Assembly: GCA_030704615.1 (NCBI GenBank)
Contig: CM060731.1
Span: 38,812,001 to 38,876,000, forward strand
Origin: Takakia lepidozioides
Taxonomy: Eukaryota; Plantae; Bryophyta
Direction of reading: 5' to 3'
Length of the DNA: 64,000 nucleotides
The position numbers and the translations under genes are program-made. The notes beneath the pieces were generated by a model. It was not told where the DNA came from, ran no database searches, and saw nothing but the letters and a program-made list of their open reading frames with translations. How positions within the stretch are numbered: position 1 is the first letter of the stretch; every line of letters begins with the position of its first letter. Shown here one piece after another: positions 1 to 42,783 of the stretch.

Positions 1-3000
1 AAATTCAAGTTCAGACTCAAGCTCCTTTGGTTCAGCTTCCGGGGCTTCCTCATCCGGTTCCTCCTCCACTGTGGCTGGTTCCCTCTCTGCTACCAGTTCT
101 ACAAGCGCTTCATGCCTGAGGTCCCTTCCTTCTTCACGGATAGGTGCAACGGGCTCTTCTTCCAACTTGGCATCGTGATCCTCAACAAAGTCGGGGGTGG
201 CAGGGGTTGCTTCCTCTTCCGCCGGTACTAGATTAGTGGGTGGCAATGGTTCAGCAACCTCCTCGACCAGCTCCTTCTCCTCGGCCTCTGGTGGCGCTAT
301 TACCTCACTTACCTGGGTCTCGGGTTCTTCCGGTTCGATGGCGGCCTCCTCAATAGCGGCAGGCAGGGCAGGCTCGGTCTCCTTCTCGGGAGCAAGTGCA
401 AGGTCAGGGTCAAGCTCCTTTGGTTCATATTCCGGGGCTTCCTGAACCGGTTCCTCCTCCACGGGGGCTGGTTCCCTCTCCGCTATAAGCACTGCAAGCG
501 CTTCAGGCCTGAGGTCCCTTGCTTCTTCATAGACAGGTGCAACGGGCTCTTCTTCCAAATTGGCATCCTGATCCTCAACCGGTTTAACAATATCGGGGGT
601 GGCAGGCGCTGCTTCCTCCTCCGCGGCAACCTCTACAAGCTGCTCCTTTTCCTCGGCCTTTGGAGGTGCATGTACATCAGTGACCTCCTCCGGCTCGGGT
701 TCTTCGGGTTCAACGGCGGCCTCCTCAACAGCAATAGGCGGCACATGCTCTGTGTCCTTCTCGGGAGCAAGATGTTCAAGTTCAGGGTCAAGCTCCTTTG
801 GTTCATATTCCGGGGCTTCCTCAACCAGTTCCTCCTCCACGGGGGCTGGTTCCCTCTCCGCTACAAGCTCTGCAAGCGCTTCAGGCCCGAGGTCCCTTGC
901 TTCTTCAGATACAGGTGCAACGGGCTCTTCTTCCAAATTGGCATCCTGATCCTCAACCGGTTTAACAATATCGGGGGTGGCAGGCGCTGCTTCCTCCTCC
1001 GCGGCAACCTCTACAAGCTGCTCCTTTTCCACGGCCTTTGGAGGTGCATGTACATCAGTGACCTCCTCCGGCTCGGGTTCTTCGGGTTCAACGGCGGCCT
1101 CCTCAACAGCAATAAGCGGCACATGCTCTGTGTCCTTCTCGGGAGCAAGATGTTCAAGTTCAGGGTCAAGCTCCTTTGGTTCATATTCCGGGGCTTCCTC
1201 AACCAGTTCCTCCTCCACGGGGGCTGGTTCCCTCTCCGCTACAAGCTCTGCAAGCGCTTCAGGCCCGAGGTCCCTTGCTTCTTCAGATACAGGTGCAACG
1301 GGCTCTTCTTCCAAATTGGCATCCTGATCCTCAACCGGTTTAACAATACGGGGGTGGCAGGTGCTGCTTCCTCCTCCGCGGCAACCTCTACAAGCTGCTC
1401 CTTTTCCTCGGCCTTTGGAGGTGCAAGTACATCAGTGACCTCCTCCGGCTCGGGTTCTTCGGGATCAACGGCAGCCTCCTGAACAACAGTAGGCGGCGCA
1501 AGCTCTGTGTCCTTCTCGGGAGCAAGATGTTCAAGTTCAGGGTCAAGCTCCTTTGGTTCATATTCCGGGGCTTCCTCAACTGGTTCCTCCTCCACGGGGG
1601 CTGGTTCCCTCTCCGCTACCAGCTCTGCAAACGCTTCTGGCTCGAGGTCCCTTGCTTCTTCTTGGAGAGGTGCAACCGCCTGTTCTTCCAACTTGGCATC
1701 CTGAACCTCAACAATGTCGGGGGTGGCAAGTGCTGCTTCCTCCTCCGCCGGGACTAGATCAGCGGGTGGCAATGGTTCAGCAACCTCCTCGACCAGCTCA
1801 TTCTCCTCGGCCTCTTGCGGCACTATTAACTCACTTACCTCCGGCTCGGGTTCTTCTGTTCGTTGGCGGCCTCCTCAATAGCGGCAGGCGACGCAGGCTT
1901 ACTCTCCTTCTCGGGAGCAAGTTCATGTTCAGACCCAAGCTCCTTTGGTTTAGCTTCCGGGGCTTCCTCAACCGGTTCCTCCTCCACTGGGGCTGGTTCC
2001 CTCTCTGCTACCACTTCTGCAAGCGCTTTAGGCCTGAGGTCCCTTGCTTCTTCACGGACAGGTGCAACGGGCTCTTCTTCCAAACTGGGCATCCTGATCC
2101 TCAACAATGTCGGGGTGGCAGGTGCTGCTTCATCCTCCGCTCGTACTAGAGTAGTGGGTGGCAATGGTTCAGCAACCTCCTCGACCAGCTCCTTCTCCTC
2201 GGCCTCTTTCGGCGCTATTAACTCACTTACCTCCGGCTCGGGTTCTTGGTTCGACGGCGGCCTCCTTAACAGCGGCAGGCGATGCAGGCTCACTCTCCTT
2301 CTCGGGAGCAAGTTCAAGTTCAGGGTCAAGCTCCTTTGGTTCAGCTTCCGGGGCTTCCTCAACTGGTTCCTCCTCCACTGGGGCTGGTTCCCTCTCTGCT
2401 ACCAGTTCTGCAAGCGCTTCAGGCTTGAGGTCCCTTGCTTCTTCTTGGACAGGTGCAACAGGCTCTTCTTCCAACTTGGCATCGTGATCCTCAACAATGT
2501 AGGGGTGGCAGGTGCTTCTTCCTTCTCCGCCGGTACTAGATTAGTGGGTGGCATGGTTCAGCAACCTCCTCGACCAGCTCCTTCTCCTCGGCCTCTTTCG
2601 GCGCTATTAACTCACTTACCTCCGGCTCGGGTTCTTCTAGTTCGACGGCGGCCTCCTCAACAGCGGCAGGCGACGCAGGCTCACTCTCCTTTTCGGGAGC
2701 AAGTTCAAGTTCAGGGTCAAGCTCCTTTGGTTCAGCTTCCGGGGCTTCCTCAACCGGTTCCTCCTCCACTGGGGCTGGTTCCCTCTCTGCTACCAGTTCT
2801 GCAAGCGCTTCAGGCTTGAGGTCCCTTGCTTCTTCACGGACAGGTGCAACGGGCTCTTCTTCCAAATTGGCATCCTGATCCTCAACAAAGTCGGGGGTGG
2901 CAGGTGCTGCTTCCACCTCCGCCGGTACTAGATTAGTGGGTGGCGATGGTTCAACAACCTCCTCGACCAGCTCCTTCTCCTCGGCCTCTGGTGGCGCTAT

Positions 3001-6000
3001 TCCCTCACTTACCTTGGTCTCGGGTTCTTCCGGTTTGACGGCGGCCTCCTCAATAGCGGCAGGCAGGGCAGGCTCGGTCTCCTTCTCGGAGCAAGTGCAA
3101 GTTCAGGGTCAAGCTCCTTTGGTTCATATTCCGGGGCTTCCTCAACCGGTTCCTCCTCCACGGGGGCTGGTTCCCTCTCCGCTACAAGCTCTGCAAGCGC
3201 TTCAGGCCCGAGGTCCCTTGCTTCTTCATAGACAGGTGCAACGGGCTCTTCTTCCAAATTGGCATCCTGATCCTCAACCGGTTTAACAATATCTGGTGTG
3301 GCAGGCGCTGCTTCCTCCTCCGCGGCAACCTCTACAAGCTGCTCCTTTTCCTCGGCCTTTGGAGGTGCAAGTACATCAGTGACCTCCTCCGGCTCGGGTT
3401 CTTCGGGTTCAACGGCGGCCTCCTCAACAGCAATAGGCGGGGCAAGCTCTGTGTCCTTCTCGGGAGCAAGATGTTCAAGTTCAGGGTCAAGCTCCTTTGG
3501 TTCATATTCCGGGGCTTCCTCAACTGGTTCCTCCTCCACGGGGGCTGGTTCCCTCTCCGCTACCAGCTCTGCAAGCGCTTCAGGCTCGAGGTCCCTTGCT
3601 TCTTCATGGACAGGTGCAACCGCCTGTTCTTCCAACTTGGCATCCTGAACCTCAACAATGTCGGGGGTGGCAGGCGCTGCTTCCTCCTCCGCCGGGACAA
3701 GATCAGCGGGTGGCAATGGTTCAGCAACCTCCTCGACCAGCTCCTTCTCCTCGGCCTCTTGCGGCCCTATTAACTCACTTACCTCCGGCTCGGGTTCATC
3801 TGGTTCGACGGCGGCCTCCTCAACAGCGGCAGGCGACGCAGGCTCAGTCTCCTTCGGGAGCAAGTTCAAGTTCAGACTCAAGCTCCTTTGGTTCAGCTTC
3901 CGGGGCTTCCTCAACCGGTTCCTCCTCCACGAGGGCTAGTTCCCTCTCTGCTACCACCTCTGCAAGCGCTTCAGGCCTGAGGTCCCTTGCTTCTTCATGG
4001 ACAGGTGCAACGGGCTCTTCTTCCAACTTGGCATCCTGATCCTCACCAATGTCGGGGGTGGCAGGTGCTGCTTCCTCCTCCGCCGGCACTAGATTAGTGG
4101 GTGGCAATGGTTCAGCAACCTCGACCAGCTCCTTCTCCTCGGCCTCTTGCGGCGCTATTAACTCACTTACCTCCGGCTCGGGTTCTTCTAATTCGACGGC
4201 GGCGTCCTCAACAACGGCAGCGACGCAGGCTCTCTCTTCTTCTCGGAGCAAGTTCCAAATCAGACTCAAGCTCCTTTGGTTCAGCTTCCTGGGCTTCCTC
4301 AACCGGTTCCTCCTCCACTGGGGCTGGTTCCCTCTCTGCTACCAGTTTTGCAAGCGCTTCAGGCCTGAGGTCCCTTGCTTCTCATAGACAGGTGCAACGG
4401 GCTCTTCTTCAAAATTGGCATCCTGATCCTCAACAATGTCGGGGGTGGCAGGTGCTGCTTCCTCCTCCGCCGGTACTAGATTAGTGGGGCAATGGTTCAG
4501 TAACCTCCTCGACCAGCTCCTTCTCCTCGGCCTCTGGTGGTGCTATTCCCTCACTTACCTTGGTCTCGGGTTGTTCTGGTTCGACGGCGGCCTCCTCAAT
4601 AGCGGCAGGCAGGGCAGGCTCGGTCTCCTTCTCGGGAGCAAGTGCAAGTTCAGGGTCAAGCTCCTTTGGTTCATATTCAGGGGCTTCCTCAACCGGTTCC
4701 TCCTCCACGGGGGCTGGTTCCCTCTCCGCTACAAGCTCTGCAAGCGCTTCAGGCCCGAGGTCCCTTGCTTCTTCATAGACAGGTGCAACGGGCTCTTCTT
4801 CCAAATTGGCATCTGATCCTCAACCGGTTTAACAATATCGTGCGTGGCAGGTGCTGCTTCCTCCTCCGCGGCAACCTCTACAAGCTGCTCCTTTTCCTCG
4901 GCCTTTGGAGGTGCAAGTACATCAGTGACCCTCCTCCGGCTCGGGTTCTTCGGGTTCAACGGCGGCCTCCTCAACAGCAATAGGCGGCGCAAGCTCTGTG
5001 TCCTTCTCTGGAGCAAGATGTTCAAGTTCAGGTCAAGCTCCTTTGGTTCATATTCCGGGGATTCCTCAACCGGTTCCTCCTCCACAGGGGCTGGTTCCCC
5101 CTCCGCTACCAGCTCTGCAAGCGCTTCAGGCTCAAGGTCCCTTACTTCTTCATGGACAGGTGCAACCGCCTGTTTTTCCAACTTGGCATCCTGACCCTCA
5201 ACAATGTCGGGGGTGGCAGGCGCTGCTTCCTCCTCCGCCGGGACAAGATCAGCGGTGGCAATGGTTCAGCAACTCCTCCACCAGCTCCTTCTCCTCGGCC
5301 TCTTGCGGCCCTATTAACTCACTTACCTCCGGCTCGGGTTCATCTGGTTCGACGGCGGCCTCCTCAACAGCGGCAGGCGACGCAGGCTCAGTCTCCTTCT
5401 CGGGAGCAAGTTCGAGTTCAGACTCAAGCTCCTTTGGTTCAGCTTCCGGGGCGTCCTCAACCGGTTCCTCCTCCACGAGGGCAAGTTCCCTCTCTGCTAC
5501 CAGTTCTGCAAGCGCTTCAGGCCTGAGGTCCTTGCTTTTCACGGACAGGTGCAACGGGCTCTCTTCCAACTTGGCATCCTGATTCCTCACCAATGTCGGG
5601 GGTGGCAGGTGCTGCTTCCTCCTCCGCCGGTACTAGATTAGGGGGTGGCAATGGTTCAGCAACCTCCTCGACCAGCTCCTTCTCCTCGGCCTCTTGCGGC
5701 GCTATTAACTCACTTACCTCCGGCTCGGGTTCTTCTGGTTCGACGGCGGCCTCCTCAACAGCGGCAGGCGACGCAGGCTCACTCTCCTTCTCGGGAGCAA
5801 GTTCAAGTTCAGACTCAAGCTCCTTTGGTTCAGCTTCCGGGGCTTCCTCAACCGGTTCCTCCTCCACTAGGGCTGGTTCCGTCTGTACTACTTGTTCTCA
5901 AGCGCTTCAGGCCTGAGGGTCCCTTGCTTCTTCACGGACAGGTGCAACGGGCTCTTCTTCCAACTTGGCATCCTGATCCTCACAATGTCGGGGGTGGCAG

Positions 6001-9000
6001 GTGCTGCTTCCTCCTCCGCCGGTACTAGATTAGTGGGGTGGCAATGGTTCAGCAACCTCCTCGACAGCTCCTTCTCCTCGGCCTCTTGCGGCGCTATTAA
6101 CTCACTTACCTCCGGCTCGGGTTCTTCTGGTTCGACGGTGGCCTCCTCAACAGCGGCAGGCGACGAAGGCTCACTCTCCTTCTTGGGAGCAAATTCAAGT
6201 TCAGACTCAAGCTCCTTTGGTTCAGCTTCCGGGGCTTCCTCATCCGGTTCCTCCTCCACTGTGGCTGGTTCCCTCTCTGCTACCAGTTCTACAAGCGCTT
6301 CATGCCTGAGGTCCCTTCCTTCTTCACGGATAGGTGCAACGGGCTCTTCTTCCAACTTGGCATCGTGATCCTCAACAAAAGTCGGGGGTGGCAGGGGTTG
6401 CTTCCTCTTCCGCCGGTACTAGATTAGTGGGTGGCAATGGTTCAGCACCTCCTCGACCAGCTCCTTCTCCTCGGCCTCTGGTGGCGCTATTACCTCACTT
6501 ACCTGGGTCTCGGGTTCTTCCGGTTCGATGGCGGCCTCCTCAATAGCGGCAGGCAGGGCAGGGCTCGGTCTCCTTCTCGGGAGCAAGTGCAAGGTCAGGG
6601 TCAAGCTCCTTTGGTTCATATTCCGGGGCTTCCTGAACCGGTTCCTCCTCCACGGGGGCTGGTTCCCTCTCCGCTATAAGCACTGCAAGCGCTTCAGGCC
6701 TGAGGTCCCTTGCTTCTTCATAGACAGGTGCAACGGGCTCTTCTTCCAAATTGGCATCCTGATCCTCAACCGGTTTAACAATATCGGGGGTGGCAGGCGC
6801 TGCTTCCTCCTCCGCGGCAACCTCTACAAGCTGCTCCTTTTCCTCGGCCTTTGGGGTGCATGTACATCAGTGACCCTCCTCCGGCTCGGGTTCTTCGGGT
6901 TCAACGGCGGCCTCCTCAACAGCAATAGGCGGCACATGCTCTGTGTCCTTCTCGGGAGCAAGTGTTCAAGTTCAGGGTCAAGCTCCTTTGGTTCATATTC
7001 CGGGGCTTCCTCAACCCAGTTCCTCCTCCACGGGGGCTGGTTCCCTCTCCGCTACAAGCTCTGCAAGCGCTTCAGGCCCGAGGTCCCTTGCTTCTTCAGA
7101 TACAGGTGCAACGGGCTCTTCTTCCAAATTGGCATCCTGATCCTCAACCGGTTTAACAATATCGGGGGTGGCAGGCGCTGCTTCCTCCTCCGCGGCAACC
7201 TCTACAAGCTGCTCCTTTTCCACGGCCTTTGGAGGTGCATGTACATCAGTGACCTCCTCCGGCTCGGGTTCTTCGGGTTCAACGGCGGCCTCCTCAACAG
7301 CAATAAGCGGCACATGCTCTGTGTCCTTCTCGGGAGCAAGATGTTCAAGTTCAGGGTCAAGCTCCTTTGGTTCATATTCCGGGGCTTCCTCAACCAGTTC
7401 CTCCTCCACGGGGGCTGGTTCCCTCTCCGCTACAAGCTCTGCAAGCGCTTCAGGCCCGAGGTCCCTTGCTTCTTCAGATACAGGTGCAACGGGCTCTTCT
7501 TCCAAATTGGCATCCTGATCCTCAACCGGTTTAACAATATCGGGGGTGGCAGGTGCTGCTTCCTCCTCCGCGGCAACCTCTACAAGCTGCTCCTTTTCCT
7601 CGGCCTTTGGAGGTGCAAGTACATCAGTGACCTCCTCCGGCTCGGGTTCTTCGGGATCAACGGCAGCCTCCTGAACAACAGTAGGCGGCGCAAGCTCTGT
7701 GTCCTTCTCGGAGCAAGATGTTCAAGTTCAGGGTCAAGCTCCTTTGGTTCATATTCCGGGGCTTCCTCAACTGGTTCCTCCTCCACGGGGGCTGGTTCCC
7801 TCTCCGCTACCAGCTCTGCAAACGCTTCTGGCTCGAGGTCCCTTGCTTCTTCTTGGAGAGGTGCAACCGCCTGTTCTTCCAACTTGGCATCCTGAACCTC
7901 AACAATGTCGGGGGTGGCAAGTGCTGCTTCCTCCTCCGCCGGGACTAGATCAGCGGGTGGCAATGGTTCAGCAACCTCCTCGACCAGCTCATTCTCCTCG
8001 GCCTCTTGCGGCACTATTAACTCACTTACCTCCGGCTCGGGTTCTTCTGGTTCGTTGGCGGCCTCCTCAATAGCGGCAGGCGACGCAGGCTTACTCTCCT
8101 TCTCGGGAGCAAGTTCATGTTCAGACCCAAGCTCCTTTGGTTTAGCTTCCGGGGCTTCCTCAACCGGTTCCTCCTCCACTGGGGCTGGTTCCCTCTCTGC
8201 TACCACTTCTGCAAGCGCTTTAGGCCTGAGGTCCCTTGCTTCTTCACGGACAGGTGCAACGGGCTCTTCTTCCAACTGGGCATCCTGATCCTCAACAATG
8301 TCGGGGGTGGCAGGTGCTGCTTCATCCTCCGCTCGTACTAGAGTAGTGGGTGGCAATGGTTCAGCAACCTCCTCGACCAGCTCCTTCTCCTCGGCCTCTT
8401 TCGGCGCTATTAACTCACTTACCTCCGGCTCGGGTTCTTCTGGTTCGACGGCGGCCTCCTTAACAGCGGCAGGCGATGCAGGCTCACTCTCCTTCTCGGA
8501 GCAAGTTCAAGTTCAGGGTCAAGCTCCTTTGGTTCAGCTTCCGGGGCTTCCTCAACTGGTTCCTCCTCCACTGGGGCTGGTTCCCTCTCTGCTACCAGTT
8601 CTGCAAGCGCTTCAGGCTTGAGGTCCCTTGCTTCTTCTTGGACAGGCAACAGGCTCTTCTTCCAACTTGGCATCGTGATCCTCAACAATGTAGGGGGTGG
8701 CAGGTGCTTCTTCCTTCTCCGCCGGTACTAGATTAGTGGGTGGCAATGGTTCAGCAACCTCCTCGACCAGCTCCTTCTCCTCGGCCTCTTTCGGCGCTAT
8801 TAACTCACTTACCTCCGGCTCGGGTTCTTCTAGTTCGACGGCGGCCTCCTCAACAGCGGCAGGCGACGCAGGCTCACTCTCCTTTTCGGGAGCAAGTTCA
8901 AGTTCAGGGTCAAGCTCCTTTGGTTCAGCTTCCGGGGCTTCCTCAACCGGTTCCTCCTCCACTGGGGCTGGTTCCCTCTCTGCTACCAGTTCTGCAAGCG

Positions 9001-11300
9001 CTTCAGGCTTGAGGTCCCTTGCTTCTTCACGGACAGGTGCAACGGGCTCTTCTTCCAAATTGGCATCCTGATCCTCAACAAAGTCGGGGGTGGCAGGTGC
9101 TGCTTCCACCTCCGCCGGTACTAGATTAGTGGGTGGCGATGGTTCAGCAACCTCCTCGACCAGCTCCTTCTCCTCGGCCTCTGGTGGCTATTCCCTCACT
9201 TACCTTGGTCTCGGGTTCTTCCGGTTTGACGGCGGCCTCCTCAATAGCGGCAGGCAGGGCAGGCTCGGTCTCCTTCTCGGGAAGTGCAAGTTCAGGGTCA
9301 AGCTCCTTTGGTTCATATTCCGGGGCTTCCTCAACCGGTTCCTCCTCCACGGGGGCTGGTTCCCTCCGCTACAAGCTCTGCAAGCGCTTCAGCCCGAGGT
9401 CCCTTGCTTCTTCATAGACAGGTGCAACGGGCTCTTCTTCCAAATTGGCATCCTGATCCTCAACCGGTTTAACAATATCTGGTGTGGCAGGCGCTGCTTC
9501 CTCCTCCGCGGCAACCTCTACAAGCTGCTCCTTTTCCTCGGCCTTTGGAGGTGCAAGTACATCAGTGACCTCCTCCGGCTCGGGTTCTTCGGGTTCAACG
9601 GCGGCCTCCTCAACAGCAATAGGCGGGGCAAGCTCTGTGTCCTTCTCGGGAGCAAGATGTTCAAGTTCAGGGTCAAGCTCCTTTGGTTCATATTCCGGGG
9701 CTTCCTCAACTGGTTCCTCCTCCACGGGGGCTGGTTCCCTCTCCGCTACCAGCTCTGCAAGCGCTTCAGGCTCGAGGTCCCTTGCTTCTTCATGGACAGG
9801 TGCAACCGCCTGTTCTTCCAACTTGGCATCCTGAACCTCAACAATGTCGGGGGTGGCAGGCGCTGCTTCCTCCTCCGCCGGGACAAGATCAGCGGGTGGC
9901 AATGGTTCAGCAACCTCCTCGACCAGCTCCTTCTCCTCGGCCTCTTGCGGCCCTATTAACTCACTTACCTCCGGCTCGGGTTCATCTGGTTCGACGGGGC
10001 CTCCTCAACAGCGGCAGGCGACGCAGGCTCAGTCTCCTTCTCGGGAGCAAGTTCAAGTTCAGACTCAAGCTCCTTTGGTTCAGCTTCCGGGGCGTCCTCA
10101 ACCGGTTCCTCCTCCACGAGGGCTAGTTCCCTCTCTGCTACCAGTTCTGCAAGCGCTTCAGGCCTGAGGTCCCTTGCTTCTTCACGGACAGGTGCAACGG
10201 GCTCTTCTTCCAACTTGGCATCCTGATCCTCACCAATGTCGGGGGTGGCAGGTGCTGCTTCCTCCTCCGCCGGTACTAGATTAGTGGGTGGCAATGGTTC
10301 AACAACCTCCTCGACCAGCTCCTTCTCTCCGGCCTCTGGCGGCACTATTATATCTCGTATCTCCACCTCGGGTTTTTCCGGTTCAATGGAGGCCTCCTCA
10401 ACTGCGACAGGCAGCGAAGGCTCCGTCTCCTTTTCGAGAGCAAGTTCGAGTTCAGGCTCAAGCTCCTTTGGTTTAGTTTTCGGGTTGTGCTCAACCGTTT
10501 CCTCCTCCACGGGGGCTGGTTCCCTCTCTGCCACCTGCTCTGCAAGCGATTCTGGCTCGAGGTCCCTTACTTCTTCATGGACAAGTGCAACGGCATCTTC
10601 GGCCTCGAACTTGGCATCATGATCCACAACCGGCTCAACAATATCGGGGGTGGGAGCTGCTTCCTCCTCCGCCGGGACTAGATCAGCGGGAGACGATGGT
10701 TTAGCAACCTCCTCGACCAACTCCTTCTCCTCGGACTCTGGAGGTGCAAGTACATGAGTGACCTCCGGCTCGGGTTCTTCCGGTTCAACAACGGCCTCCT
10801 CACCAGTGGCAGGCGGCGCAAGCTCTGGCTCCTTCTCGGAAACAAATTCAAGTACATGCTCTAGCTCCTTTGGTTCAGCTTGCGGGGCTTGCGCGACGGA
10901 TTTCTCCTCCACCGGGGCTACCTCCCTGTCGATTACCCGCTCTGTAAGCGCTTCAGGTTCCATGTCCCTTGCTTCTTCATGGACAGGTGCAACGGGCTCT
11001 TCCTCCAACTTGGCGTCATGATCCTGAACCGGTTCAACAATATCAAGGGTGGTAGCTTCCTTCCTCCTCCGCCGGGACTGGATCAGCAGGAGGCGATGGT
11101 TCAGCAACCTCCTCGACTATAAGCTCCTTCTCCTTGGACTCTGGCAGTGCAAGTACATGAGTGGCCTCCGGCTCGGGTTCTTCTGGTTCAACGGCGGCCT
11201 CCTCAATAGCGGCAGGCGCCACATGCTCCGTCTCTGTCTCTTTCTCGAGAACAAGTTCAAGTTCAAGCTCAAGCTCCTTTGATTCAGCTTTCGGGGCTTG
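1..11300 (-). repeat. Coding macrosatellite: ~378/393-bp monomers in ~1.55 kb and ~6.19 kb higher-order repeats
   Basis: The marker GGTGCAAC recurs at about 143, 536, 914, 1292, 1669, 2061 ... 6333 (16 units per 6,190 bp). The sequence at position 1 recurs at 6191, and rare variants recur at the same offset (about 1481/7673 and 3291/9476). Units at 10300-11300 are more diverged. Confidence 0.95.
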
Positions 11301-13459
11301 CGGAACGAGTTCCTCGTCCAGCTCGGGGACGTCTAGTGTTGCGGCAAGGGCTTTTGGATCCACACTGTTTGGTTGTTCATGGGCTAGTATGTCCTCTTTA
11401 GGAGGTTCCTTGTCCAAATTGGCAAACTGGGGAGAGTCTCTTACTTCGTCTTGTTCCTCGTATGGATGTGACAATTCTCGAGCTATCGTTGGAGCTATCC
11501 CTAGAGCGTCGGGCTCAGCTTCCTTCACTGCAAACATATCAGGCTCGGGCCCCTTTGGTGGTTCATCAACGTTTTCCCTAGAGCTAGTGGCAGGTTCCTC
11601 GAAGGTGGGGGGTGGTGACCGCATCGGCAAAATGTACTTGTGCCCGTCCGAATGCAACCGTCCTTCCTGGTCGCCTCCTGCAAATCCTTCCGGCTCTAAA
11701 ACTTTCGCGGAGCTCCCTGGATAATCAGTTATGTAAGGCACGACTTTACTTTTCAATCCAAACGCCTTTGATTGCGGCTTAGCTGAAGTTGACGAGCTCT
11801 TTTCTACGAGCTCTGCGCTAACAGAATCAATCGGACCGGCCAATCTTGTAGCAGCTTCCTCAATCTCTGCTGTCGGCTGATCGTGTGAAGTACCCAGCAA
11901 TACATATCCTCCGTCGCCGTTCACAGAATGAGTTTCAATATCATCAGACTGGTCACTCCCGAGAGATCTAACAGTATCTATTTCTTCAGAAGGATCAATT
12001 TGGGTTTGAGAGTCTGGTACTAAGTGGAATCCCTGCAAAGACCCCAAGCCACTCTGAGAATCTACTAGTGTCGCATTTGGAATACTGCCAGTTATTGAAT
12101 CTGCTTCTGGAACCGAACCTGTTTGGCGAATACCTTCCACTACATATTCCTCAGGGAGTGCCTGCTTTCCTGCATCCCTCTTTTCCACTCGAGTAGGGGT
12201 CTGGGAAATTTTCTCACTTCGCAAATGACTGATAGTTGGGTCCACTTTAGCAGTAGCTGCTGCATCTCTTGCTACAATTTTCTTCACCTCTCTTGCTTCC
12301 TTTTCCTCCGAACTAGATGCCAGGACCGGTTTGTTTTCCACGTTTCCAGCCAGCTGGGTTGCTGTGGGAGATATGCCCACTGGTTTGGCGTCTGTAATTA
12401 CAACTGGACGGGCCTCTCTAGATTCTGAGACCACACTTACGAGTTTAGTGTCTGGTGTAACCAGCTTAGGCACCGTCACCAGTTGATCCGGCGAGATACT
12501 TCTTGACCGCGGCTCCCGCGTTACCAATTCCCAGTGATCCCCCAACTCAACGAAGTCCTTCAGCGTCTGCAATGCTTGTGCGTCCAAAGCTGACTTCCTC
12601 GTGTCGGCGTCGTGTGAAGTGAGTGGCGCGACAATGCTATCAGATTCCTTTCTCGGCACCGCTGCCAAGGGAGATGCAGCCACCTCAGATTTTCCAAGCA
12701 AAGGCGTTCTACTCGGCAGCACAGCGACTGGTAGAGGTCTCTCGTCCTCCCGTGCATCGGGTGGCATGCTACCAGTGGTTGAAAGAGTTCTTGAATCAGG
12801 ATGGGAGCTACTGACTCTTTTCCGAAGACCAACGGTGCTTCTTTCTGGCAGGCTGCGAGAGGTTGACAATGTGGCTTCTTTAGATGGGAATAGATCATCA
12901 TCACTACTCGTATCATAGAACCTCTGTTGTGTGGGGGGCACAGAAGATTGGGCAAGCAAAGCAGGCCCCCCGCTTGGTTGAGGTGCATCAGCACTGGATC
13001 GGGGGTACTTGGGCGGCAAATTCAAATCCACCCGGGCTGGCGAGGGCTGAAAGTGTTGAAGCTCCTCGGAAGCATCGTGGAAAGTATCGGGGCTCCGTCC
13101 TTCACTGGAGAAGGAGCGGGAGGGACTCGGCATTGCAGTGTTGTAAGCACTGTGAAGTTCTGAGGAAGCCTGTAGCTTCCTCCCAGAATTGGAGACCGGC
13201 GATTGCAGCTCTTGTTCATCGAAAATAACATCCTCATCGATTATGTCGTCGTCCTCTGTTTTCTGACTCGCTGTGCTCTCCTCTTTCTGCAAGCATGTGA
13301 AGACTTCATCAAAATTGGAAATCAACGTCACTTATCTATCTATCTTATCTATCCCTCCCATGTCCTTGAAACTCATTCGAGAGGATGGCTTCGGGTCATT
13401 TTTACGCTTCTAGAGGCCTGATGGCACACTTGATCAACAGCTTCTTTCACTTTCGCCAT
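1..13459 (-). CDS. Giant acidic tandem-repeat protein (Glu/Pro/Ala/Val-rich, PEVK-like, probably intrinsically disordered); 3'-partial, at least ~4,400 aa
   Basis: Model: exon 13459-13430 (MAKVKEAVDQ, ATG directly preceded by an in-frame TGA), GT..AG intron 13429-13287 (phase 0), then one very large exon from 13286 (KEESTASQKTEDD...) to beyond position 1. Minus-strand ORFs 11043-13331, 9965-11107, 7580-8356, 3009-3914 and others all encode the same repeat, joined by 1-bp frameshifts that differ between near-identical repeat copies. Confidence 0.8.
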
Positions 13460-13640
13460 TCACTCCGACCTACTGCAAATTGCAAAGTTGAGTACAGAAC
13501 CCATATATTGCAGTTTTCAACTTGAAGGTGCAATTTAACAGTAGCAAGCCTTGTCGCCGTGCACTGATTTTCATAGACCAACTCCTGGGGGAAGACCGCA
13601 GTGAATCATTTTCTGCCGGTTAGATATATATGTATTTTTG

Positions 13641-14363
13641 CTACGCCCTCCGCGTTCCCGTTTTGTTCTTATACTTGGGAACAGTATCGGGCAAGAAATC
13701 GACCAAGTGGAATTTTTCATCGCGTGGCCTGGTCTGCCTTTCATGAATGGCAAAATCAATGAAAGGTTCACGCCAGGATGGTGTAAGTCCAAGTGGCCAT
13801 TCCTGTTACTTGTTCGTTAACATGTAGGATCAGATAACAACAGGTTACTGGTAAAAGTGAGTACACTTCTACACTCACATATGAGCGCGCCCCGCAACAT
13901 CAATCACACCACACGGTCTGTGGAAGCCGTAGATCAATTTGGGAAAGAAGGGAGGTGGACAGACAACTTCTTTCTACCGGAATTTAGATTTTTGCGACTC
14001 AAGCTGGATCTCTTTCCATGGAGTGATCTGAGGTATCCAGGCCCTCGGCAAGATTTCCTTGTTTACTGATCACCTACAACGAGCCTTTCAAGTTGACAAG
14101 CGATGCGGACTCATGCTGGTGGCACACTTTGCTCTGACATTAAGTCTGAAACAATCAAGACATACCTTGGGAATGAGCAGCTCCAAGGTGCTACGATCAG
14201 GTTCGGTAGTAGTGCGAATGTCCTTCGCCTTGGATGCGGACTTAGCCGCTGGTGTGGAAGAGACAGGCGCAGCTGCAACGGATCTGGGCTGAGGCTGTGC
14301 CCTAGACGCCACCGCATTCCCACTCCGATCCCTGCTTGCACACTTTCCCCCGCCTTTCCCCAT
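13641..14363 (-). CDS. Small spliced ORF or uORF of unknown function upstream of the giant gene (exon structure uncertain)
   Basis: Acceptor ttgcag|GG-ATG, then 14363-14166 (MGKGGGKCAS...LELLIPK) ending at a strong AAG|gtatgt donor. Further exon-like blocks start at 14073 and at 13802-13641 (EWPLGLTPSWREPFIDF...TRRA*). The simplest splice gives 90 aa with a stop at 13999. Confidence 0.35.
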
Positions 14364-32869: not shown

Positions 32870-34344
32870 ATGAGTCCGACGGAGTGCCCGCCATGTGTGC
32901 CCCCCCTGTTTCTGTGTCCAATATCTTTGGAAATAATGAGGGACCCTGTTACCGTCTGCACTGGCCAAACGTACGAAAGAAGCAGCATTCAGAAATGGCT
33001 AGAAGAAGGGCATCGCACTTGCCCGATCACAATGTGTCACCTCGACAACCACACCCTCATTCCCAATCTGATTGTCCGCCGCCTAATTCAAGCGTGGGTG
33101 CGGGAAAATGGTCCAGGCAGTTTGCCTGAGACCCCCTCAACTTCTCCCCGAAAAGAAAATGCGGGGAGCGAGAAGAGAAGACCGATAGCAGCGGACCCGG
33201 AGCGAGTTCTTTCTCTCTTAAGAGAATTGGCTAGGGGAGGACACAGAGTGAAAATGGCTGCCAGAAGTTTACGATTGCTAGCGAAAGAAAGAGAAGAGTA
33301 CCGGACGTGCATCGAGGAAGTAGGAGGGTGTCTACTACTTGTGTCTCTCTTATGGACCAACCCTGCCGAGGAGACACACGAAGACTGTGAGGCGTGTGAG
33401 GATGTATTGGCGGTCTTAGTCCTTCTCTCACAATGCAGTGCGAACACGCGTCATATGGTGACCGAGCCCCAGAAGCTTACGTGGGTGGTGTGGCATCTGG
33501 AAAAGGGAGCCCCTTGGGCGAGGGTGAATGCGGCAGCTTTGCTCGAGAGCTTGCTAGTCTCAGAGGACTTTTGTGCTGGGGTTGGAAAATTCCCAGGTGT
33601 CTTGCAGGGGTTGGTGAAATTGCTCAATGAAGGCAGCCTCCATCAGCACCGGGGGTCAAAGATTGCTGTGAGAGCGTTGCTGGCTGCATGCCTATGCAAG
33701 GTAGAACTCTTGTGAGAATATTTTCGTCTTGAAACTTTCTCTTTAGAAGGCCTCAGAAGAGCTAGTTTTTGGGTAAATTATCTAAAAAATCAAACCTTAT
33801 ACTGTCACTCTGTCAGACAAGGATCTGGTGTTGCCTATGCATTCTATCACAGATTTTGTAAGACTACAACTTTCTTGTACCCATCGTGTTCGATCAGGTG
33901 AATAGAGCACGTGCAGCGGATGCTGGTGCAGTGGGAGCCTTGGTGGAATATTTATCAGATGCACGATCAACCACAGCAGAGAGATGCCTTGCTACGTTGG
34001 AGTTGTTGTGTACCACCACAGAAGGACAGGTTGCAGCCAGCCGGCATGCACTCGCAATCCCCATGCTCGTGAAAATGGTTTTGAGGGTCTCTCTGCGGGG
34101 AACAGAATATGCAACTGGGACTCTCCTAGCCATCTGCAAATCTGGACCAATCGAGGTGCTCCAGGTCGCAATGCAAGCAGGAGCCCGAACCCAGATGCTG
34201 TTTCTGTTGCAAAGTGATGGGACCCCACGGGCCAAGCGGAAGGCTTTGGAACTATTGAAGCTTCTTCACACGGTCTGTTGCCTGCCCATGGTTGGCAAGC
34301 TTTCCAATGCTGTCACAAACTCTTGGGAACGTGTAATGGGCTAG
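32870..34344 (+). CDS. U-box/ARM-repeat E3 ubiquitin ligase (plant PUB family)
   Basis: U-box VPPLFLCPISLEIMRDPVTVCTGQTYERSSIQKW...CPITM...LIPNLIVRRLIQAW plus ARM repeats. Exons 32870-33700 and 33898-34344 (AAG|gtagaa ... tcag|GTG, phase 0). An alternative short last exon at 34495-34506 is possible, and the start codon is uncertain. Confidence 0.92.
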
Positions 34345-36684: not shown

Positions 36685-38904
36685 TCACCAGTAATCTCCA
36701 CAAGAACAAATCCCATCGTGGAAATGGTGAAAATGGATGACCACATCCCGTATGACAACTGTTCGGCCAACAATCTTTGAGATGAACTTGGTGGCAGTGT
36801 GGCAGTCACCACACGCCCCAAGGTTCTTGATGATGTGGATGGGCATCCCAGGGGGTGTGCTGACGAGCCCAAAAGCAATGGCCAGCTTCTCACTGTGGTG
36901 GCAAAGGGAGAACTCCTTTTTCTCCTCCACATTATGCAATACAAAGCACGTGTCAGGCATGTAACCAGCCTCCTTCATCTGGACAGACAATCGCTTCAGC
37001 TCAGCATGTATTCCCTCAATTTGTGGATGCAATTTGTCTTCTCCAACGAATGTATGCACTCGGTTGTTAACCTCAATACAGCTGCGGCCTGGCTCCTTTC
37101 TGACACCTCTATCCTCCATCATTTTTCTCACCTTTGCTTGATCATCCCACCTGCCAGATTCAGCATAGATGTTTGATAGCAGCACATAAGTTTGAGCGTT
37201 CTGTGGATCCAAATTGATAAGGCATCTCGCTGCATGTCCTGCTAGCTCCACATTGCCATGAATTCTGCAGGCACCAAGCAAGGCCCCCCACACCGCAGCA
37301 CCTGGTTCGATCGGCATTTCCCTGATGAAGTTCTCTGCCTCCATCAATCGCCCTCCACGGCCGAGGAGGTCCACTATGCAGCCAAAATGTTCAACTGTAG
37401 GAGTAAGCCCATGATCTCGAGTCATGGAATCAAAGTAGTGACAGCCTTCATCCATGAGGCCCACATGGCTGCAAGCAGAGAGAAGACATATGAAGGTGAT
37501 ACCGTCCGGCTTCAAGCCTTCCTGATGCATTTGTTCATATAGGCGGACAGCCTCCCTACCACACCCATGTTGACCATATCCAGCAATCATGGCATTCCAT
37601 GAGACCAGATTTCGTTGAGCCATATTGTCAAACACTTTCCGCGAATCCTTGACACTCCCACATTTGGCATACATGTCAGCAAGGGCATTCTCGAGAATTA
37701 TATCTGGCTCAATTCCAGTTTTCATGATGTCAGCGTGCACTTCTCTGCCCTTTCCCAGGGCTCCTAGATTCGCACATACAGTCAGAATGCAAGTGAACGT
37801 CACCCTGTTGGGAGAAACCTTTCCCCGTTGCATGTGCTGATAGATCTTGAACGCCTCCCTATCAAACCCATGCTGAGCATATCCTGTAATCATCGCATTG
37901 CATGAGACCACATCATTTTTAGCCATGTTGTTGAACACTTGACGTGCATCCTCCAGACTCCCACATTTGGCATACATGCCAATAAGGGCATTCTCCAGAA
38001 CAATATCTGGCACAACTCCAATTTTGATGATGTCAGCATGGATGTTTTTGCCATTATCCAGGGCTCCTAGGCTGGCAAACACATTGAGAACACAAGTGAG
38101 CGTGACCCTGTCGGGCAACATCCCTTCCTGTTGCATTTGCTTGTACATGCTGAAAACCTCCCTACCACATCCATGGTGTGCACATCCTGCCATCATGGCA
38201 TTCCATGAGACCACATTTCGTTTGGCCATATTGTTGAACACTTGGCGGGCATGCTTCATGCTCCCACATTTCGCATACATGTCAACCAGTGCAGTCTCCA
38301 GGATCATATCTGGTGCAATACCAGCTTTGACAATGTCAGCATTGACCTCTTTGCCTTTCTCCAGGTATCCAAGGCTAGCACACACATTGAGAATGCAAGT
38401 GAAGGTGACCATGTCAGGTGTCCCCCCTATCCTTATCATTTGCTCATAGATCTCTAATGCGTCCCTACCATACCCGCGCTTGGCATATGCTGCTATCATT
38501 ATAGTCCACGTAAACAAATTCCGTTCAGGCATTTTGTCAAACACTTGACGTGCATCCACCACACTCCCGCACTTGGAATACATGTTCAGAAGGGTGTTGA
38601 ATAGGAAGATGTTTGGTTTGAATCCACTTTGGATAATATGCATGTGCACCTGCTTTCCCTTTACGAGGTTTTTCTGGTTCATGCACTCCTGCAAGAAAGA
38701 GACGTAGTTATTGGAGTTTGCCTGTATGCCTTCTTGGTTAAAAATGTACAGTGCCTCTTTCAGTTGTCCCGACTTACAGAGCGTCCTCACATCCTGACAA
38801 GTGCCGGAGTTCTTGCTCATTCCCTCCCGTGGTCCAATTTCCAAAACCACTGCAAGCCTGCCATCCTGCATGGCTGAAAACTCTTGAGTTACTAACATCA
38901 TCAC
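36685..38904 (-). CDS. PLS-class PPR protein with E1-E2-DYW deaminase domain (organellar C-to-U editing factor type)
   Basis: Intronless 739-aa ORF: L-S-(P-L-S)x3-P2-L2-S2, PG box (KEPGRSCIEV), HSEKLA, CGDCH and terminal CSCGDYW. The true N-terminus or transit peptide may come from an upstream exon. Confidence 0.95.
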   Translation of the reverse strand: MMMLVTQEFSAMQDGRLAVVLEIGPREGMSKNSGTCQDVRTLCKSGQLKEALYIFNQEGIQANSNNYVSFLQECMNQKNLVKGKQVHMHIIQSGFKPNIFLFNTLLNMYSKCGSVVDARQVFDKMPERNLFTWTIMIAAYAKRGYGRDALEIYEQMIRIGGTPDMVTFTCILNVCASLGYLEKGKEVNADIVKAGIAPDMILETALVDMYAKCGSMKHARQVFNNMAKRNVVSWNAMMAGCAHHGCGREVFSMYKQMQQEGMLPDRVTLTCVLNVFASLGALDNGKNIHADIIKIGVVPDIVLENALIGMYAKCGSLEDARQVFNNMAKNDVVSCNAMITGYAQHGFDREAFKIYQHMQRGKVSPNRVTFTCILTVCANLGALGKGREVHADIMKTGIEPDIILENALADMYAKCGSVKDSRKVFDNMAQRNLVSWNAMIAGYGQHGCGREAVRLYEQMHQEGLKPDGITFICLLSACSHVGLMDEGCHYFDSMTRDHGLTPTVEHFGCIVDLLGRGGRLMEAENFIREMPIEPGAAVWGALLGACRIHGNVELAGHAARCLINLDPQNAQTYVLLSNIYAESGRWDDQAKVRKMMEDRGVRKEPGRSCIEVNNRVHTFVGEDKLHPQIEGIHAELKRLSVQMKEAGYMPDTCFVLHNVEEKKEFSLCHHSEKLAIAFGLVSTPPGMPIHIIKNLGACGDCHTATKFISKIVGRTVVIRDVVIHFHHFHDGICSCGDYW

Positions 38905-40994: not shown

Positions 40995-42783
40995 AATGCA
41001 GTTGGAAGGATATTTTGCAGAGTTAACAGTACTCGTCTCGAGGTTGATCTGGAATCTAGAGGTTGTTTTCACGAAGGCCAAGCTGGGCTGTGTGGATCAT
41101 ATCTTCACTCTAAGCCAGATTATCCAGGGAAGGAAAAAAGAAGGGAAACCCACTTTTGTATTTTTCTTGGATGTCAAAAAGGCTTATGACACAGTGTGGA
41201 GAGACGGTCTATGGCTCCGACTCTGGTCATGTGGGATCAAGGGAATGATGTGGAGAGTGGTCCATAACTTGTATGCGCACACCAAAAGTTGTGTCACTGT
41301 TAATGGACAGAAGTCTAACTTCTTTGACATAGACCAAGGTGTAGCTCAAGGATGGACCCTCTCCCCTCTGCTCTTCAATGTTTTCATCAATCAACTCCTC
41401 GAGGATGTGGAAAGTGAGGGATTTGGGTTGAGGGTAGGTGATGCCACCATACCAGCCCTTATGTTTGCGGATGACTTCGCAGGCATAGGGGAGACACCTT
41501 CCAATCGCCAGGAGTTGATTGATTGTGCGAAGCGATACTTTGACCTTTGGGGGCTAGAGGCTAACGTCAGTAAATGTGCAGTGGTGGCATTCAAAGACCA
41601 AGGGGAGGGAGGAGGTGATCTCAAGTGGCAGTGGGGAAGCCAAGAGATTCCGGTTCTCCCTTCCTACACATACCTCGGCGTTGGGTTTTCCTCCAAACTG
41701 TAACTGGGATGCACATATTCAGAAAGTTGTTCAAACTGGCAAGTGCAAAGTGCTGGGTCTCACTAAATTTTTCCACTGCAGAGGGATCAACTCTGAGGTC
41801 AAAAAAACCATGCTTTGTCGCGTTATTAGACCTGCCTTGGAGTACGCATCTTGAATATGGGTTGATAACTCCAACCAGGCTAAGTTCTAGAATCCATTCA
41901 AGTGGGGGTGCTTAAGGAGCGCATGTCACCATGCTCCAAAACAGCCAATGTGGCTGTTCGGGGTGAGTTTGGCATCCCTTCCTTAAGCTCCCCACGAGAT
42001 GAATTCAAGGTCAGATGGTGGGGTCAGGTGCAATATGTCCAACATCAGATATCCTAAGTTAATCGACTCTATATCTTGGAAGCAGGACCGCCCTGTCAAA
42101 CAGGCTAAGTCCTGGCGGAAGAGAGTGTAGAAGAGATTCTCAAGGATCTGAATCTTAGCCAGCAAGTCTTGACCCTGCTGGATAAATCTGACTTAGAGGC
42201 TGTAGTGTCAAAAGCCATGTCTGTTGCCAGGAAACGAAATGAAGTTAGGCAGAAAAACTTCCCTGAACTTGTTTCCAGTCGTGACATGGGGGAATGTATG
42301 ACCTCAAGGGTCTACCCACTCTCGGCACTAGACTGAAATTTAAACTCAGGGCGGGAAGCAAACGAAAGCAGAGAGGAAAGGAAGAGTGCAATTGCAATTG
42401 CCTGTTGTGTGGGGCAACCTGAAGACAATATTCATTTTCAGATTCATTGTCGGGGGTTCTCTCACCAGAGAGACACTCTCTTCAAATCTATCGACGGAAT
42501 TGTGCCTGTATCTCTGTTTATTACCAACTTTGGAAGAGCCAAAAGCCCAGGCCCTTTTGGGGCCTAGTTATTGGGCAAACCACACTCAGCAGGTTGATGC
42601 CTGTGTAAAGGGATTTCTAGAGGATATCTGAAAAAACCGGATCAATTGTTTATTCCAACGTAAGTCTTACTACCAGCGTCAGCCCCTGACAAAGGTAGGT
42701 TCTGTCCCTTTGTGTTCTGCTCAAACTGGGCACGGGGTCAATGGCCACAAGGCTACGGCAAACAACATCTTATGAGTACATAT
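40995..42783 (+). mobile_element. 5'-truncated, degenerate RTE/RTEX-like non-LTR retrotransposon (RT plus C-terminal Cys/His region)
   Basis: RT motifs FLDVKKAYDTVWRDGLW, QGVAQGWTLSPLLFNVFIN, LMFADD and YTYLGV; C-terminal TRLKFKLRAG...CLLCG...EDNIHFQIHC across frameshifts; 10-bp TSD TCTCGCTCTC at 40985-40994 and 42784-42793. Confidence 0.9.

What the first reader, a model, noticed from the sequence alone, without database searches (positions are those of the whole stretch)
1..13459. Giant titin-PEVK-like acidic repeat protein in a plant
Seen: a ~670-aa Ser/Pro/Asp/Glu-rich head followed by about 29-30 repeats of 126/131 aa (roughly 30% Glu, rich in Pro, Ala and Val, almost no aromatics or Cys) in what appears to be one exon of over 13 kb that runs off the window. 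I see no signal peptide or folded domain, and I noticed no stop codon in the Glu-rich frame despite many substitutions between units (not checked exhaustively). Known: titin PEVK is an entropic spring with Ca2+-responsive Glu-rich motifs, and long polyacidic disordered proteins act as spacers or cation buffers. Inference: an uncharacterised megaprotein acting as an elastic tether, scaffold or ion sponge, convergent with PEVK rather than homologous. Standard annotation would probably fragment or mask it.
Basis: partly seen in the sequence, partly recalled or inferred. Interest (0 to 1): 0.85.

Follow-up and report, generated by a model that had tools for sequence, protein, structure and literature searches.

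The report
Giant acidic repeat protein of mosses
This is a real moss gene for a huge (over 4,500 residues), floppy, negatively charged protein whose apparent frameshifts are almost certainly sequencing errors; peat mosses carry an even larger, transcribed version and the model moss a short one, and its conserved front end looks like a membrane anchor plus docking tags for the ER and autophagy machinery.

Summary
Real, with corrections. About 29.4 units of 378/393 nt encode a 30% Glu, Ala/Pro/Val-rich polyacid (pI 4.05) in four subtypes, with a 16-unit higher-order duplication. No single frame is open: there are about 42 private 1-2-nt indels. They behave like long-read errors: twin blocks differ by 24 indels but only 4 substitutions in 4 kb, shared indels are all multiples of three, and there are 0 stops where 6.9 are expected. 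Orthologues: Sphagnum models of 5,963-7,646 aa, with spliced transcripts running into the repeats; Physcomitrium 1,099 aa; other mosses under 1,000 aa. The Sphagnum 135-aa unit shows no similarity to this unit beyond composition. The head is disordered but keeps an N-terminal Gly/Cys acylation-type motif, an FFAT-like motif and two AIM-like motifs; several orthologues end in a basic motif. Best reading (about 0.4): a membrane-anchored disordered spacer or tether. It is not titin. Giant acidic 'titin-like' plant proteins are already listed in surveys, and RBB1 is the closest analogue. The host is probably Takakia. Reads were not obtained. The scan has no note of this on other DNA of this genome.

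The parts
14166..14363 (-). Coding exon 1 (66 aa): starts Met-Gly-Lys, Cys at position 8; candidate N-myristoylation plus S-acylation anchor
   Evidence: 57% identical to Sphagnum exon 1, first 11 residues invariant; same start in P. patens; same GT donor position as Sphagnum
13287..14165 (-).
   Evidence: window sequence; the equivalent 827-nt Sphagnum intron is removed exactly in contigs L002/L003
11371..13286 (-). Exon 2, non-repetitive disordered head (about 640 aa)
   Evidence: open frame; 44% identity to Sphagnum; pLDDT 46, pTM 0.13
13104..13151 (-). Conserved Ser/Thr-rich block just upstream of the FFAT-like core (candidate phospho-flank)
   Evidence: invariant between window and Sphagnum, partly in other mosses
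13062..13085 (-). FFAT-like motif (T-F-H-D-A-S-E-E); Y-x-S-[AG]-S-E in other mosses
   Evidence: the only match to a loose FFAT pattern in each of three heads, at the same place; alignment; binding untested
12522..12539 (-). AIM-like motif 1 (D-H-W-E-L-V); the only Trp of the head
   Evidence: Trp invariant in 8 of 8 sequences, D-x-W-[ED]-[LM]-[VLM]; binding untested
11892..11975 (-). Most conserved block, acidic then Gly-rich, ending in AIM-like motif 2 (Y-V-L-L)
   Evidence: found in every orthologue except one Sphagnum paralogue
1..11370 (-). Coding tandem array, about 29.4 units of 126/131 aa in four subtypes (order roughly A B C D with local duplications); runs off the window
6190..10183 (-). 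Higher-order block, copy A (units 3-13)
   Evidence: 4 substitutions and 24 private indels against copy B
1..3996 (-). Higher-order block, copy B (units 19-29); very recent duplication or assembly duplication
11055..11065 (-). First frameshift (+1 nt in a purine run); the only one outside near-identical sequence; if genuine it would end the protein at about 810 aa
   Evidence: tile only 85% identical to another copy

Best explanation
An intact, expressed gene of a moss-wide family, mis-spelled in this assembly by unpolished long-read indels (about 0.85). The product is an intrinsically disordered protein of at least 4,500 aa. Inferred mechanism: the N-terminus is myristoylated and S-acylated and holds the protein on the cytosolic face of a membrane (plasma membrane or tonoplast); the FFAT-like motif binds ER VAP27 proteins and the AIM-like motifs bind ATG8, placing the head at a membrane contact or autophagy site; the polyacid (net charge -0.28 per residue, 15% Pro) is an expanded, cation-sensitive spacer whose length and charge matter, not its sequence; a basic amphipathic motif near the C-terminus (seen only in orthologues, the window ends earlier) grips a second anionic surface. 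Shown: gene structure, selection against stops and frameshifts, conservation of the motifs, spliced transcripts in Sphagnum and P. patens. Inferred: every binding and localisation step.
For: Twin blocks: 24 private indels against 4 substitutions. All subtype-defining indels are 3, 9 or 30 nt. 0 stops against 6.9 expected. About 4 indels per kb in the array, none in 8.2 kb of unique coding DNA in the window (about 30 expected), most in homopolymer or dinucleotide runs; all but one in 150-nt tiles at least 93% identical to another copy. Orthologues of 5,963-7,646 aa; S. tenellum frames open for 4,104 and 3,285 codons; spliced contigs running 6-7 kb into the repeats; the P. patens protein on 98 contigs, mostly spliced run assemblies. 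Motif conservation amid unalignable linkers; a second moss lineage has the canonical Met-Gly-x-Cys-x-Ser start; basic tail motif net +3 to +6, hydrophobic moment 0.5-0.6 in Sphagnum.
Against: The indel at 11060 lies in more unique sequence. AIM and FFAT patterns are short and often false (PMC8666691, PMC7610837); the published FFAT matrix was not available; the FFAT core needs a one-residue gap to align with Bryopsida and is lost in one Sphagnum paralogue. Position 6 is Gly, not Ser, in the window's N-terminus. P. patens lacks the basic tail motif. Short orthologues show that giant length is dispensable.
Confidence: 0.4

Rival explanations
1. Bulk polyanion: a high-capacity, low-affinity Ca2+/cation buffer or a dehydration and freezing protectant (crowding shield), membrane-anchored or free; the AIM-like motifs only serve its turnover.
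For: About 1,270 carboxylates in the window alone (D+E 33.6%); pI about 4.1 kept in all orthologues although the unit sequences are unrelated; plant precedent in acidic cation-binding proteins (PCaP1, PMC8457133; RVCaB, from memory).
Against: A buffer need not be one giant chain nor keep seven ordered head motifs and a basic tail; short orthologues suffice in other mosses.
Confidence: 0.22
2. The head (and tail) do the work, for example as a selective-autophagy or contact-site adaptor; the array is a tolerated linker that grew by unequal crossing-over with selection only for an open frame.
For: dN/dS 0.61 pairwise, 0.86 by unique alleles; linker about 360 aa in L011/L012 against over 7,000 aa in Sphagnum; length differences between Sphagnum copies are mostly whole units; unrelated units in two lineages.
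Against: A 0.5-1 MDa chain is costly; giant size with similar period (126-135 aa), charge and Pro content occurs in two deep lineages.
Confidence: 0.25
3. The gene is broken or truncated in this plant: the indel at 11060, or many of the indels, are genuine, leaving an about 810-aa protein or a young pseudogene.
For: No reads checked; the 11060 indel sits where short-read polishing should work; 800-1,100 aa forms exist in other mosses.
Against: 24 indels to 4 substitutions is not a mutational spectrum; no indel is shared by twin units; no nonsense change; giant intact orthologues.
Confidence: 0.1
4. A true titin-like elastic filament bearing load between two anchors over micrometre distances.
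For: Contour length 1.7 micrometres for 4,500 aa; P+E+V+K 58%; super-repeat order; motifs at both ends.
Against: No Ig/FnIII domains, no PPAK-type motif; strongly net-negative; no filament-binding domain; relaxed size only tens of nm (Rg about 30 nm, scaling law from memory).
Confidence: 0.08

Closest known systems
Uncharacterised Sphagnum giants (CAK9209670.1, 7,549 aa; S. fallax BDL97_17G087100; S. jensenii 6,303 aa) and P. patens XP_024402453.1 (1,099 aa, auto-named 'FLO11-like')
   Same: Orthologous head, same N-terminus, same intron 1, acidic tail of pI about 4.1
   Different: Repeat unit 126/131 aa, Ala-rich, against 135 aa, Gln/Thr/Ile-rich, with no similarity above shuffles; intron 2 of Sphagnum has no clear counterpart; P. 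patens has no regular array. No paper names the S. fallax gene.
Arabidopsis RBB1 (At5g40450, 2,890 aa) and cotton GhRBB1; 'titin-like' giant acidic plant proteins listed in PMC6681478 (Selaginella 8,462 aa, cotton 7,209 aa, S. fallax Sphfalx0133s0012.1 9,126 aa, pI 4.05)
   Same: Very large, no domains, cytosolic, conserved mainly in a short C-terminal region (PMC4411111); RBB1 affects vacuole membrane shape. The listed S. fallax protein has the same mass per residue as the orthologue found here (112.6 Da) and may be an older model of it.
   Different: The head profile found 15 proteins and no recognisable seed-plant member. The cotton C-terminus, read by hand from a supplement, is also a basic helix ending in Ile-Leu-Gly, but spacing differs by three residues and homology was not tested.
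Titin PEVK region
   Same: Disordered, rich in P, E, V; super-repeat order
   Different: 16% Ala, 4% Lys, net charge -0.28; no PPAK repeat, no Ig/FnIII; no homology
PCaP1/DREPP (and, from memory, RVCaB, MARCKS, BASP1, AKAP12)
   Same: Candidate N-myristoyl anchor plus acidic disordered body
   Different: No DREPP Pfam hit; 20-40 times longer; FFAT- and AIM-like motifs

Membership tests
Titin / PEVK | Ig and FnIII domain arrays | tested here: not met
   No Pfam hit in window head, repeat or orthologue termini; window C-terminus unseen
Titin / PEVK | 28-residue PPAK repeats | tested here: not met
   Period 126/131 aa; no PPAK-type words, no Pfam hit
Titin / PEVK | Disordered, P/E/V/K-rich | tested here: met
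   58% P+E+V+K, pTM 0.18; single-sequence AlphaFold is weak evidence
Titin / PEVK | Entropic elasticity under load | not testable with these tools
   needs force spectroscopy
RBB1 family | Very large domain-free protein | tested here: met
RBB1 family | Conserved 75-aa C-terminal region | tested here: inconclusive
   Window lacks its C-terminus; orthologue tail motif search returned only Sphagnum-like hits; loose resemblance by eye to cotton, not scored because that sequence has no reference
RBB1 family | Shared N-terminal region | tested here: inconclusive
   Head profile over 1.84 billion proteins gave 15 hits; all that carry a species name are mosses
DREPP / PCaP | DREPP domain | tested here: not met
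FFAT-bearing VAP ligands | Core E-F-F-D-A-x-E or tolerated variant, conserved, in a disordered cytosolic region | tested here: inconclusive
   F2, D4, A5, E7 match; Y2/S4 phospho-type variants in other mosses (PMC7610837); matrix score not computed
FFAT-bearing VAP ligands | Binding to the VAP MSP domain | not testable with these tools
   needs pull-down
Selective autophagy receptors | [WFY]-x-x-[LIV] with acidic flank in a disordered region, conserved | tested here: met
   two conserved motifs (consensus from PMC8666691)
Selective autophagy receptors | ATG8 binding and cargo delivery | not testable with these tools
   needs binding and flux assays
Moss family of XP_024402453 / CAK9209670 | Shared N-terminus, intron 1 position and ordered head motifs | tested here: met

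The most novel reading that the evidence does not exclude
Mosses have an undescribed family of lipid-anchored, FFAT- and AIM-bearing disordered tethers whose acidic spacer ranges from about 360 to about 10,000 residues and was amplified from unrelated 130-residue units in two early-branching lineages (here and Sphagnum), making it a tunable-length molecular ruler or ion-gated spring between membranes, possibly the bryophyte counterpart of RBB1.
Probability: 0.2. Interest if true: 0.8.

Novelty: new variant of a known kind. Interest (0 to 1): 0.55.

Why it matters
Giant acidic 'titin-like' proteins turn up among the largest entries of many land-plant proteomes and have almost no functional explanation. 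This family offers a handle: a short, expressed orthologue in the genetic model P. patens, a conserved head with specific testable motifs, and natural length variants spanning more than twenty-fold. If the S. tenellum exon is open across its unfetched gap it is about 31 kb and encodes about 10,000 residues, among the largest in land plants. It is also a clear case of a real gene hidden by long-read errors and fragmented by annotation.

Tried and rejected
Programmed frameshifting or recoding: rejected, about 42 sites, private to single units, no common signal. Non-coding satellite or transposon: rejected by the stop deficit, frame-preserving shared indels and orthologues. Plus-strand ORFs: shadows of the repeat. 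A GTAAGT at 12440 as intron 2: wrong phase, no fitting acceptor. Homology of window and Sphagnum units: scores 75-93 against 82-91 for shuffles, profile scores within the null. Pfam and ESM Atlas: nothing. The spliced model was searched exon by exon; the joined exon 1 + exon 2 search was left out. The Takakia genome paper and the FFAT matrix were not held. P0004 was too long for the contig look-up, so the 8.6-kb S. tenellum gap stayed unread.
Full report
1. The observation. Tandem Repeats Finder finds an array over 4-11,320 with periods 378 and 392/393 nt. Cutting at a fixed anchor gives 28 complete units plus partial ones at each end, about 29.4 in all: nine of the 378-nt type, eighteen of the 393-nt type and one of 402 nt. 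In register the units read on the minus strand as E 29.8, A 15.8, P 15.4, V 9.5, L 8.0, D 4.6, K 4.2%, net charge -0.28 per residue, pI 4.05. A non-repetitive Ser/Pro/Glu/Asp-rich frame lies upstream, open from 13286 to 11046. Pfam finds nothing and AlphaFold predicts no fold for head or repeat (shallow or no alignment, so weak evidence). But no single frame is open: the longest minus-strand ORF in the array is 380 aa, and frame tracking needs at least 31 shifts. The three stops on that path lie between pairs of compensating shifts that the tracker missed.

2. The frameshifts look like sequencing errors. The units fall into four subtypes in a recurring order, and units 3-13 recur 16 units later as units 19-29. 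These two 4.0-kb blocks differ by 4 substitutions and 24 indels of 1-2 nt, none shared. Every indel that defines a subtype is 3, 9 or 30 nt. Among 212 distinct substitutions none makes a stop; 6.9 are expected from the observed spectrum (P about 0.001), and none of 3,272 in-register codons is a stop. About 41 private indels (about 4 per kb; 31 of the 45 counted events are in homopolymer or dinucleotide runs, and four of the 45 are alignment artefacts of unit 1) fall in the array, none in 8.2 kb of unique coding DNA of the same window, where about 30 would be expected. They sit in 150-nt tiles 93-100% identical to another copy, where short-read polishing fails; the divergent units 1-2 have none. 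One exception is the +1 at about 11060, in a tile only 85% identical to any other copy; if genuine it would end the protein near 810 aa. The near-perfect duplication may itself be an assembly artefact.

3. Gene structure and family. The donor and acceptor (intron 14165-13287) match the Sphagnum intron 1, which is removed exactly in two JGI contigs, as is intron 2; these spliced contigs run 6-7 kb into the repeats, so the Sphagnum array is transcribed. The window protein is thus at least 66 + 4,428 aa. Sphagnum models are 5,963, 6,303, 7,152, 7,549 and 7,646 aa, built of about 135-aa units with 18-19% Glu, 11-13% Pro, net charge -0.20. In S. tenellum the repeat exon is open for 4,104 codons on one side and 3,285 on the other of an 8.6-kb stretch I could not fetch; if open throughout it is about 31 kb, about 10,200 codons, while the annotation splits it into three small models. 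A head profile against 1.84 billion proteins gave 15 hits, among them P. patens XP_024402453.1 (1,099 aa, on 98 contigs), a 1,510-aa S. balticum paralogue and short genes of an unnamed moss lineage with a linker of about 360 aa. The window sequence is its own deep branch, closest to Sphagnum at 42%. With two PPR-DYW genes in the window and about 5,084 windows of 64 kb (325 Mb), the host is probably Takakia lepidozioides, 325 Mb, PacBio plus Illumina, PPR-rich (PMC13120521); this is inference.

4. The repeat. The window unit and the Sphagnum unit share period range, acidity and Pro content, but align no better than shuffled or reversed controls. Either they were amplified separately from different stretches, or concerted turnover erased a common ancestor. 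Between window units amino acids change almost freely (dN/dS 0.61 pairwise, 0.86 by unique alleles) while stops and frame breaks are excluded. Selection therefore acts on frame, and probably on composition and length, not on a fold.

5. The ends. Amid unalignable linkers the head keeps, in order: a Met-Gly-Lys start with a Cys at 8 (Met-Gly-Lys-Cys-Ala-Ser in a second lineage), an acidic Phe motif, a Ser/Thr-rich block followed by an FFAT-like core (F-H-D-A-S-E here; Y-x-S-[AG]-S-E elsewhere, the phospho-FFAT pattern of PMC7705450), the single invariant Trp in D-x-W-E-[LM]-[VL], and an acidic, Gly-rich block ending Y-[VI]-[LF]-L. The last two fit the ATG8-interacting consensus in a disordered region (PMC8666691; 10.1101/406538). 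Dual acylation directs plant proteins to the plasma membrane (PMC3927097). Sphagnum and the short genes end in a basic motif closing with G-L-P-W-P-P, net +3 to +6, amphipathic in Sphagnum; P. patens lacks it and the window ends before it. All such short motifs give false positives, and none was tested for binding.

6. Mechanism. Most likely (0.4) a lipid-anchored disordered protein that docks on ER VAP27 and ATG8 through its head and uses the polyacid as an expanded, cation-sensitive spacer, with the basic tail holding a second anionic surface. For 4,500 residues the contour length is 1.7 micrometres and the relaxed radius of gyration about 30 nm (constants from memory). Rivals: tolerated runaway growth of a linker (0.25), bulk cation or drying buffer (0.22), broken gene (0.1), load-bearing titin-like spring (0.08).

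7. Comparison. It is not titin: no Ig/FnIII, no PPAK repeat, strongly acidic, 16% Ala. Giant acidic 'titin-like' or unknown proteins were listed for Selaginella, cotton, Marchantia, Klebsormidium and S. fallax (9,126 aa, pI 4.05, probably this gene) in PMC6681478, without study. Arabidopsis RBB1, 2,890 aa, domain-free, conserved mostly in 75 C-terminal residues and affecting vacuole membrane shape (PMC4411111), is the nearest functional analogue; the cotton tail read by hand from a supplement resembles the moss basic motif only loosely, and membership is unresolved.

8. Verdict. A real, conserved, undescribed moss gene family with a giant member here; a new variant of a class known only from annotation lists and one genetic study. 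Interest 0.55.

Noticed in passing
window 36685-38904 (+) and 43929-45947 (+): Two intact single-exon PPR genes ending in DYW domains (739 and 672 aa), typical organellar RNA-editing factors; used as the error-rate control.
   Followed up: partly
window 32870-34344 (+) and about 48355-49960 (-): Two plant U-box/ARM (PUB) genes; the first has U-box and ARM_PUB Pfam hits and continues in a second ORF after a probable intron.
   Followed up: partly
window 40996-41703 (+) and 58802-59929 (+): Fragments of LINE-type reverse transcriptase ORFs (judged from the translation only).
   Followed up: no
window about 12230: The position of Sphagnum intron 2 reads as uninterrupted coding sequence here; intron 2 seems lost, with a roughly 60-codon insertion just before it.
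   Followed up: partly
L004 11541-11950: The Sphagnum models end by reading through a GT donor; a further exon at about 11768-11938 would add some 70 residues, so the annotated C-terminus is probably wrong.
   Followed up: partly
L002 1-1603, L003 1-1612: The Sphagnum spliced contigs carry about 1.6 kb upstream of the ATG, collinear with the genome: a very long 5' leader; P. patens contigs have up to 1.46 kb.
   Followed up: no
L011, L012, L013: Short family members of an unnamed moss sit next to a convergent protein-kinase gene; no such synteny with the window, Sphagnum or P. patens loci was seen.
   Followed up: no
P0024 (S. balticum CAM6023210.1): A 1,510-aa Sphagnum paralogue keeps the N-terminus and basic tail but has eroded FFAT-like and Gly-rich AIM-like motifs.
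   Followed up: partly
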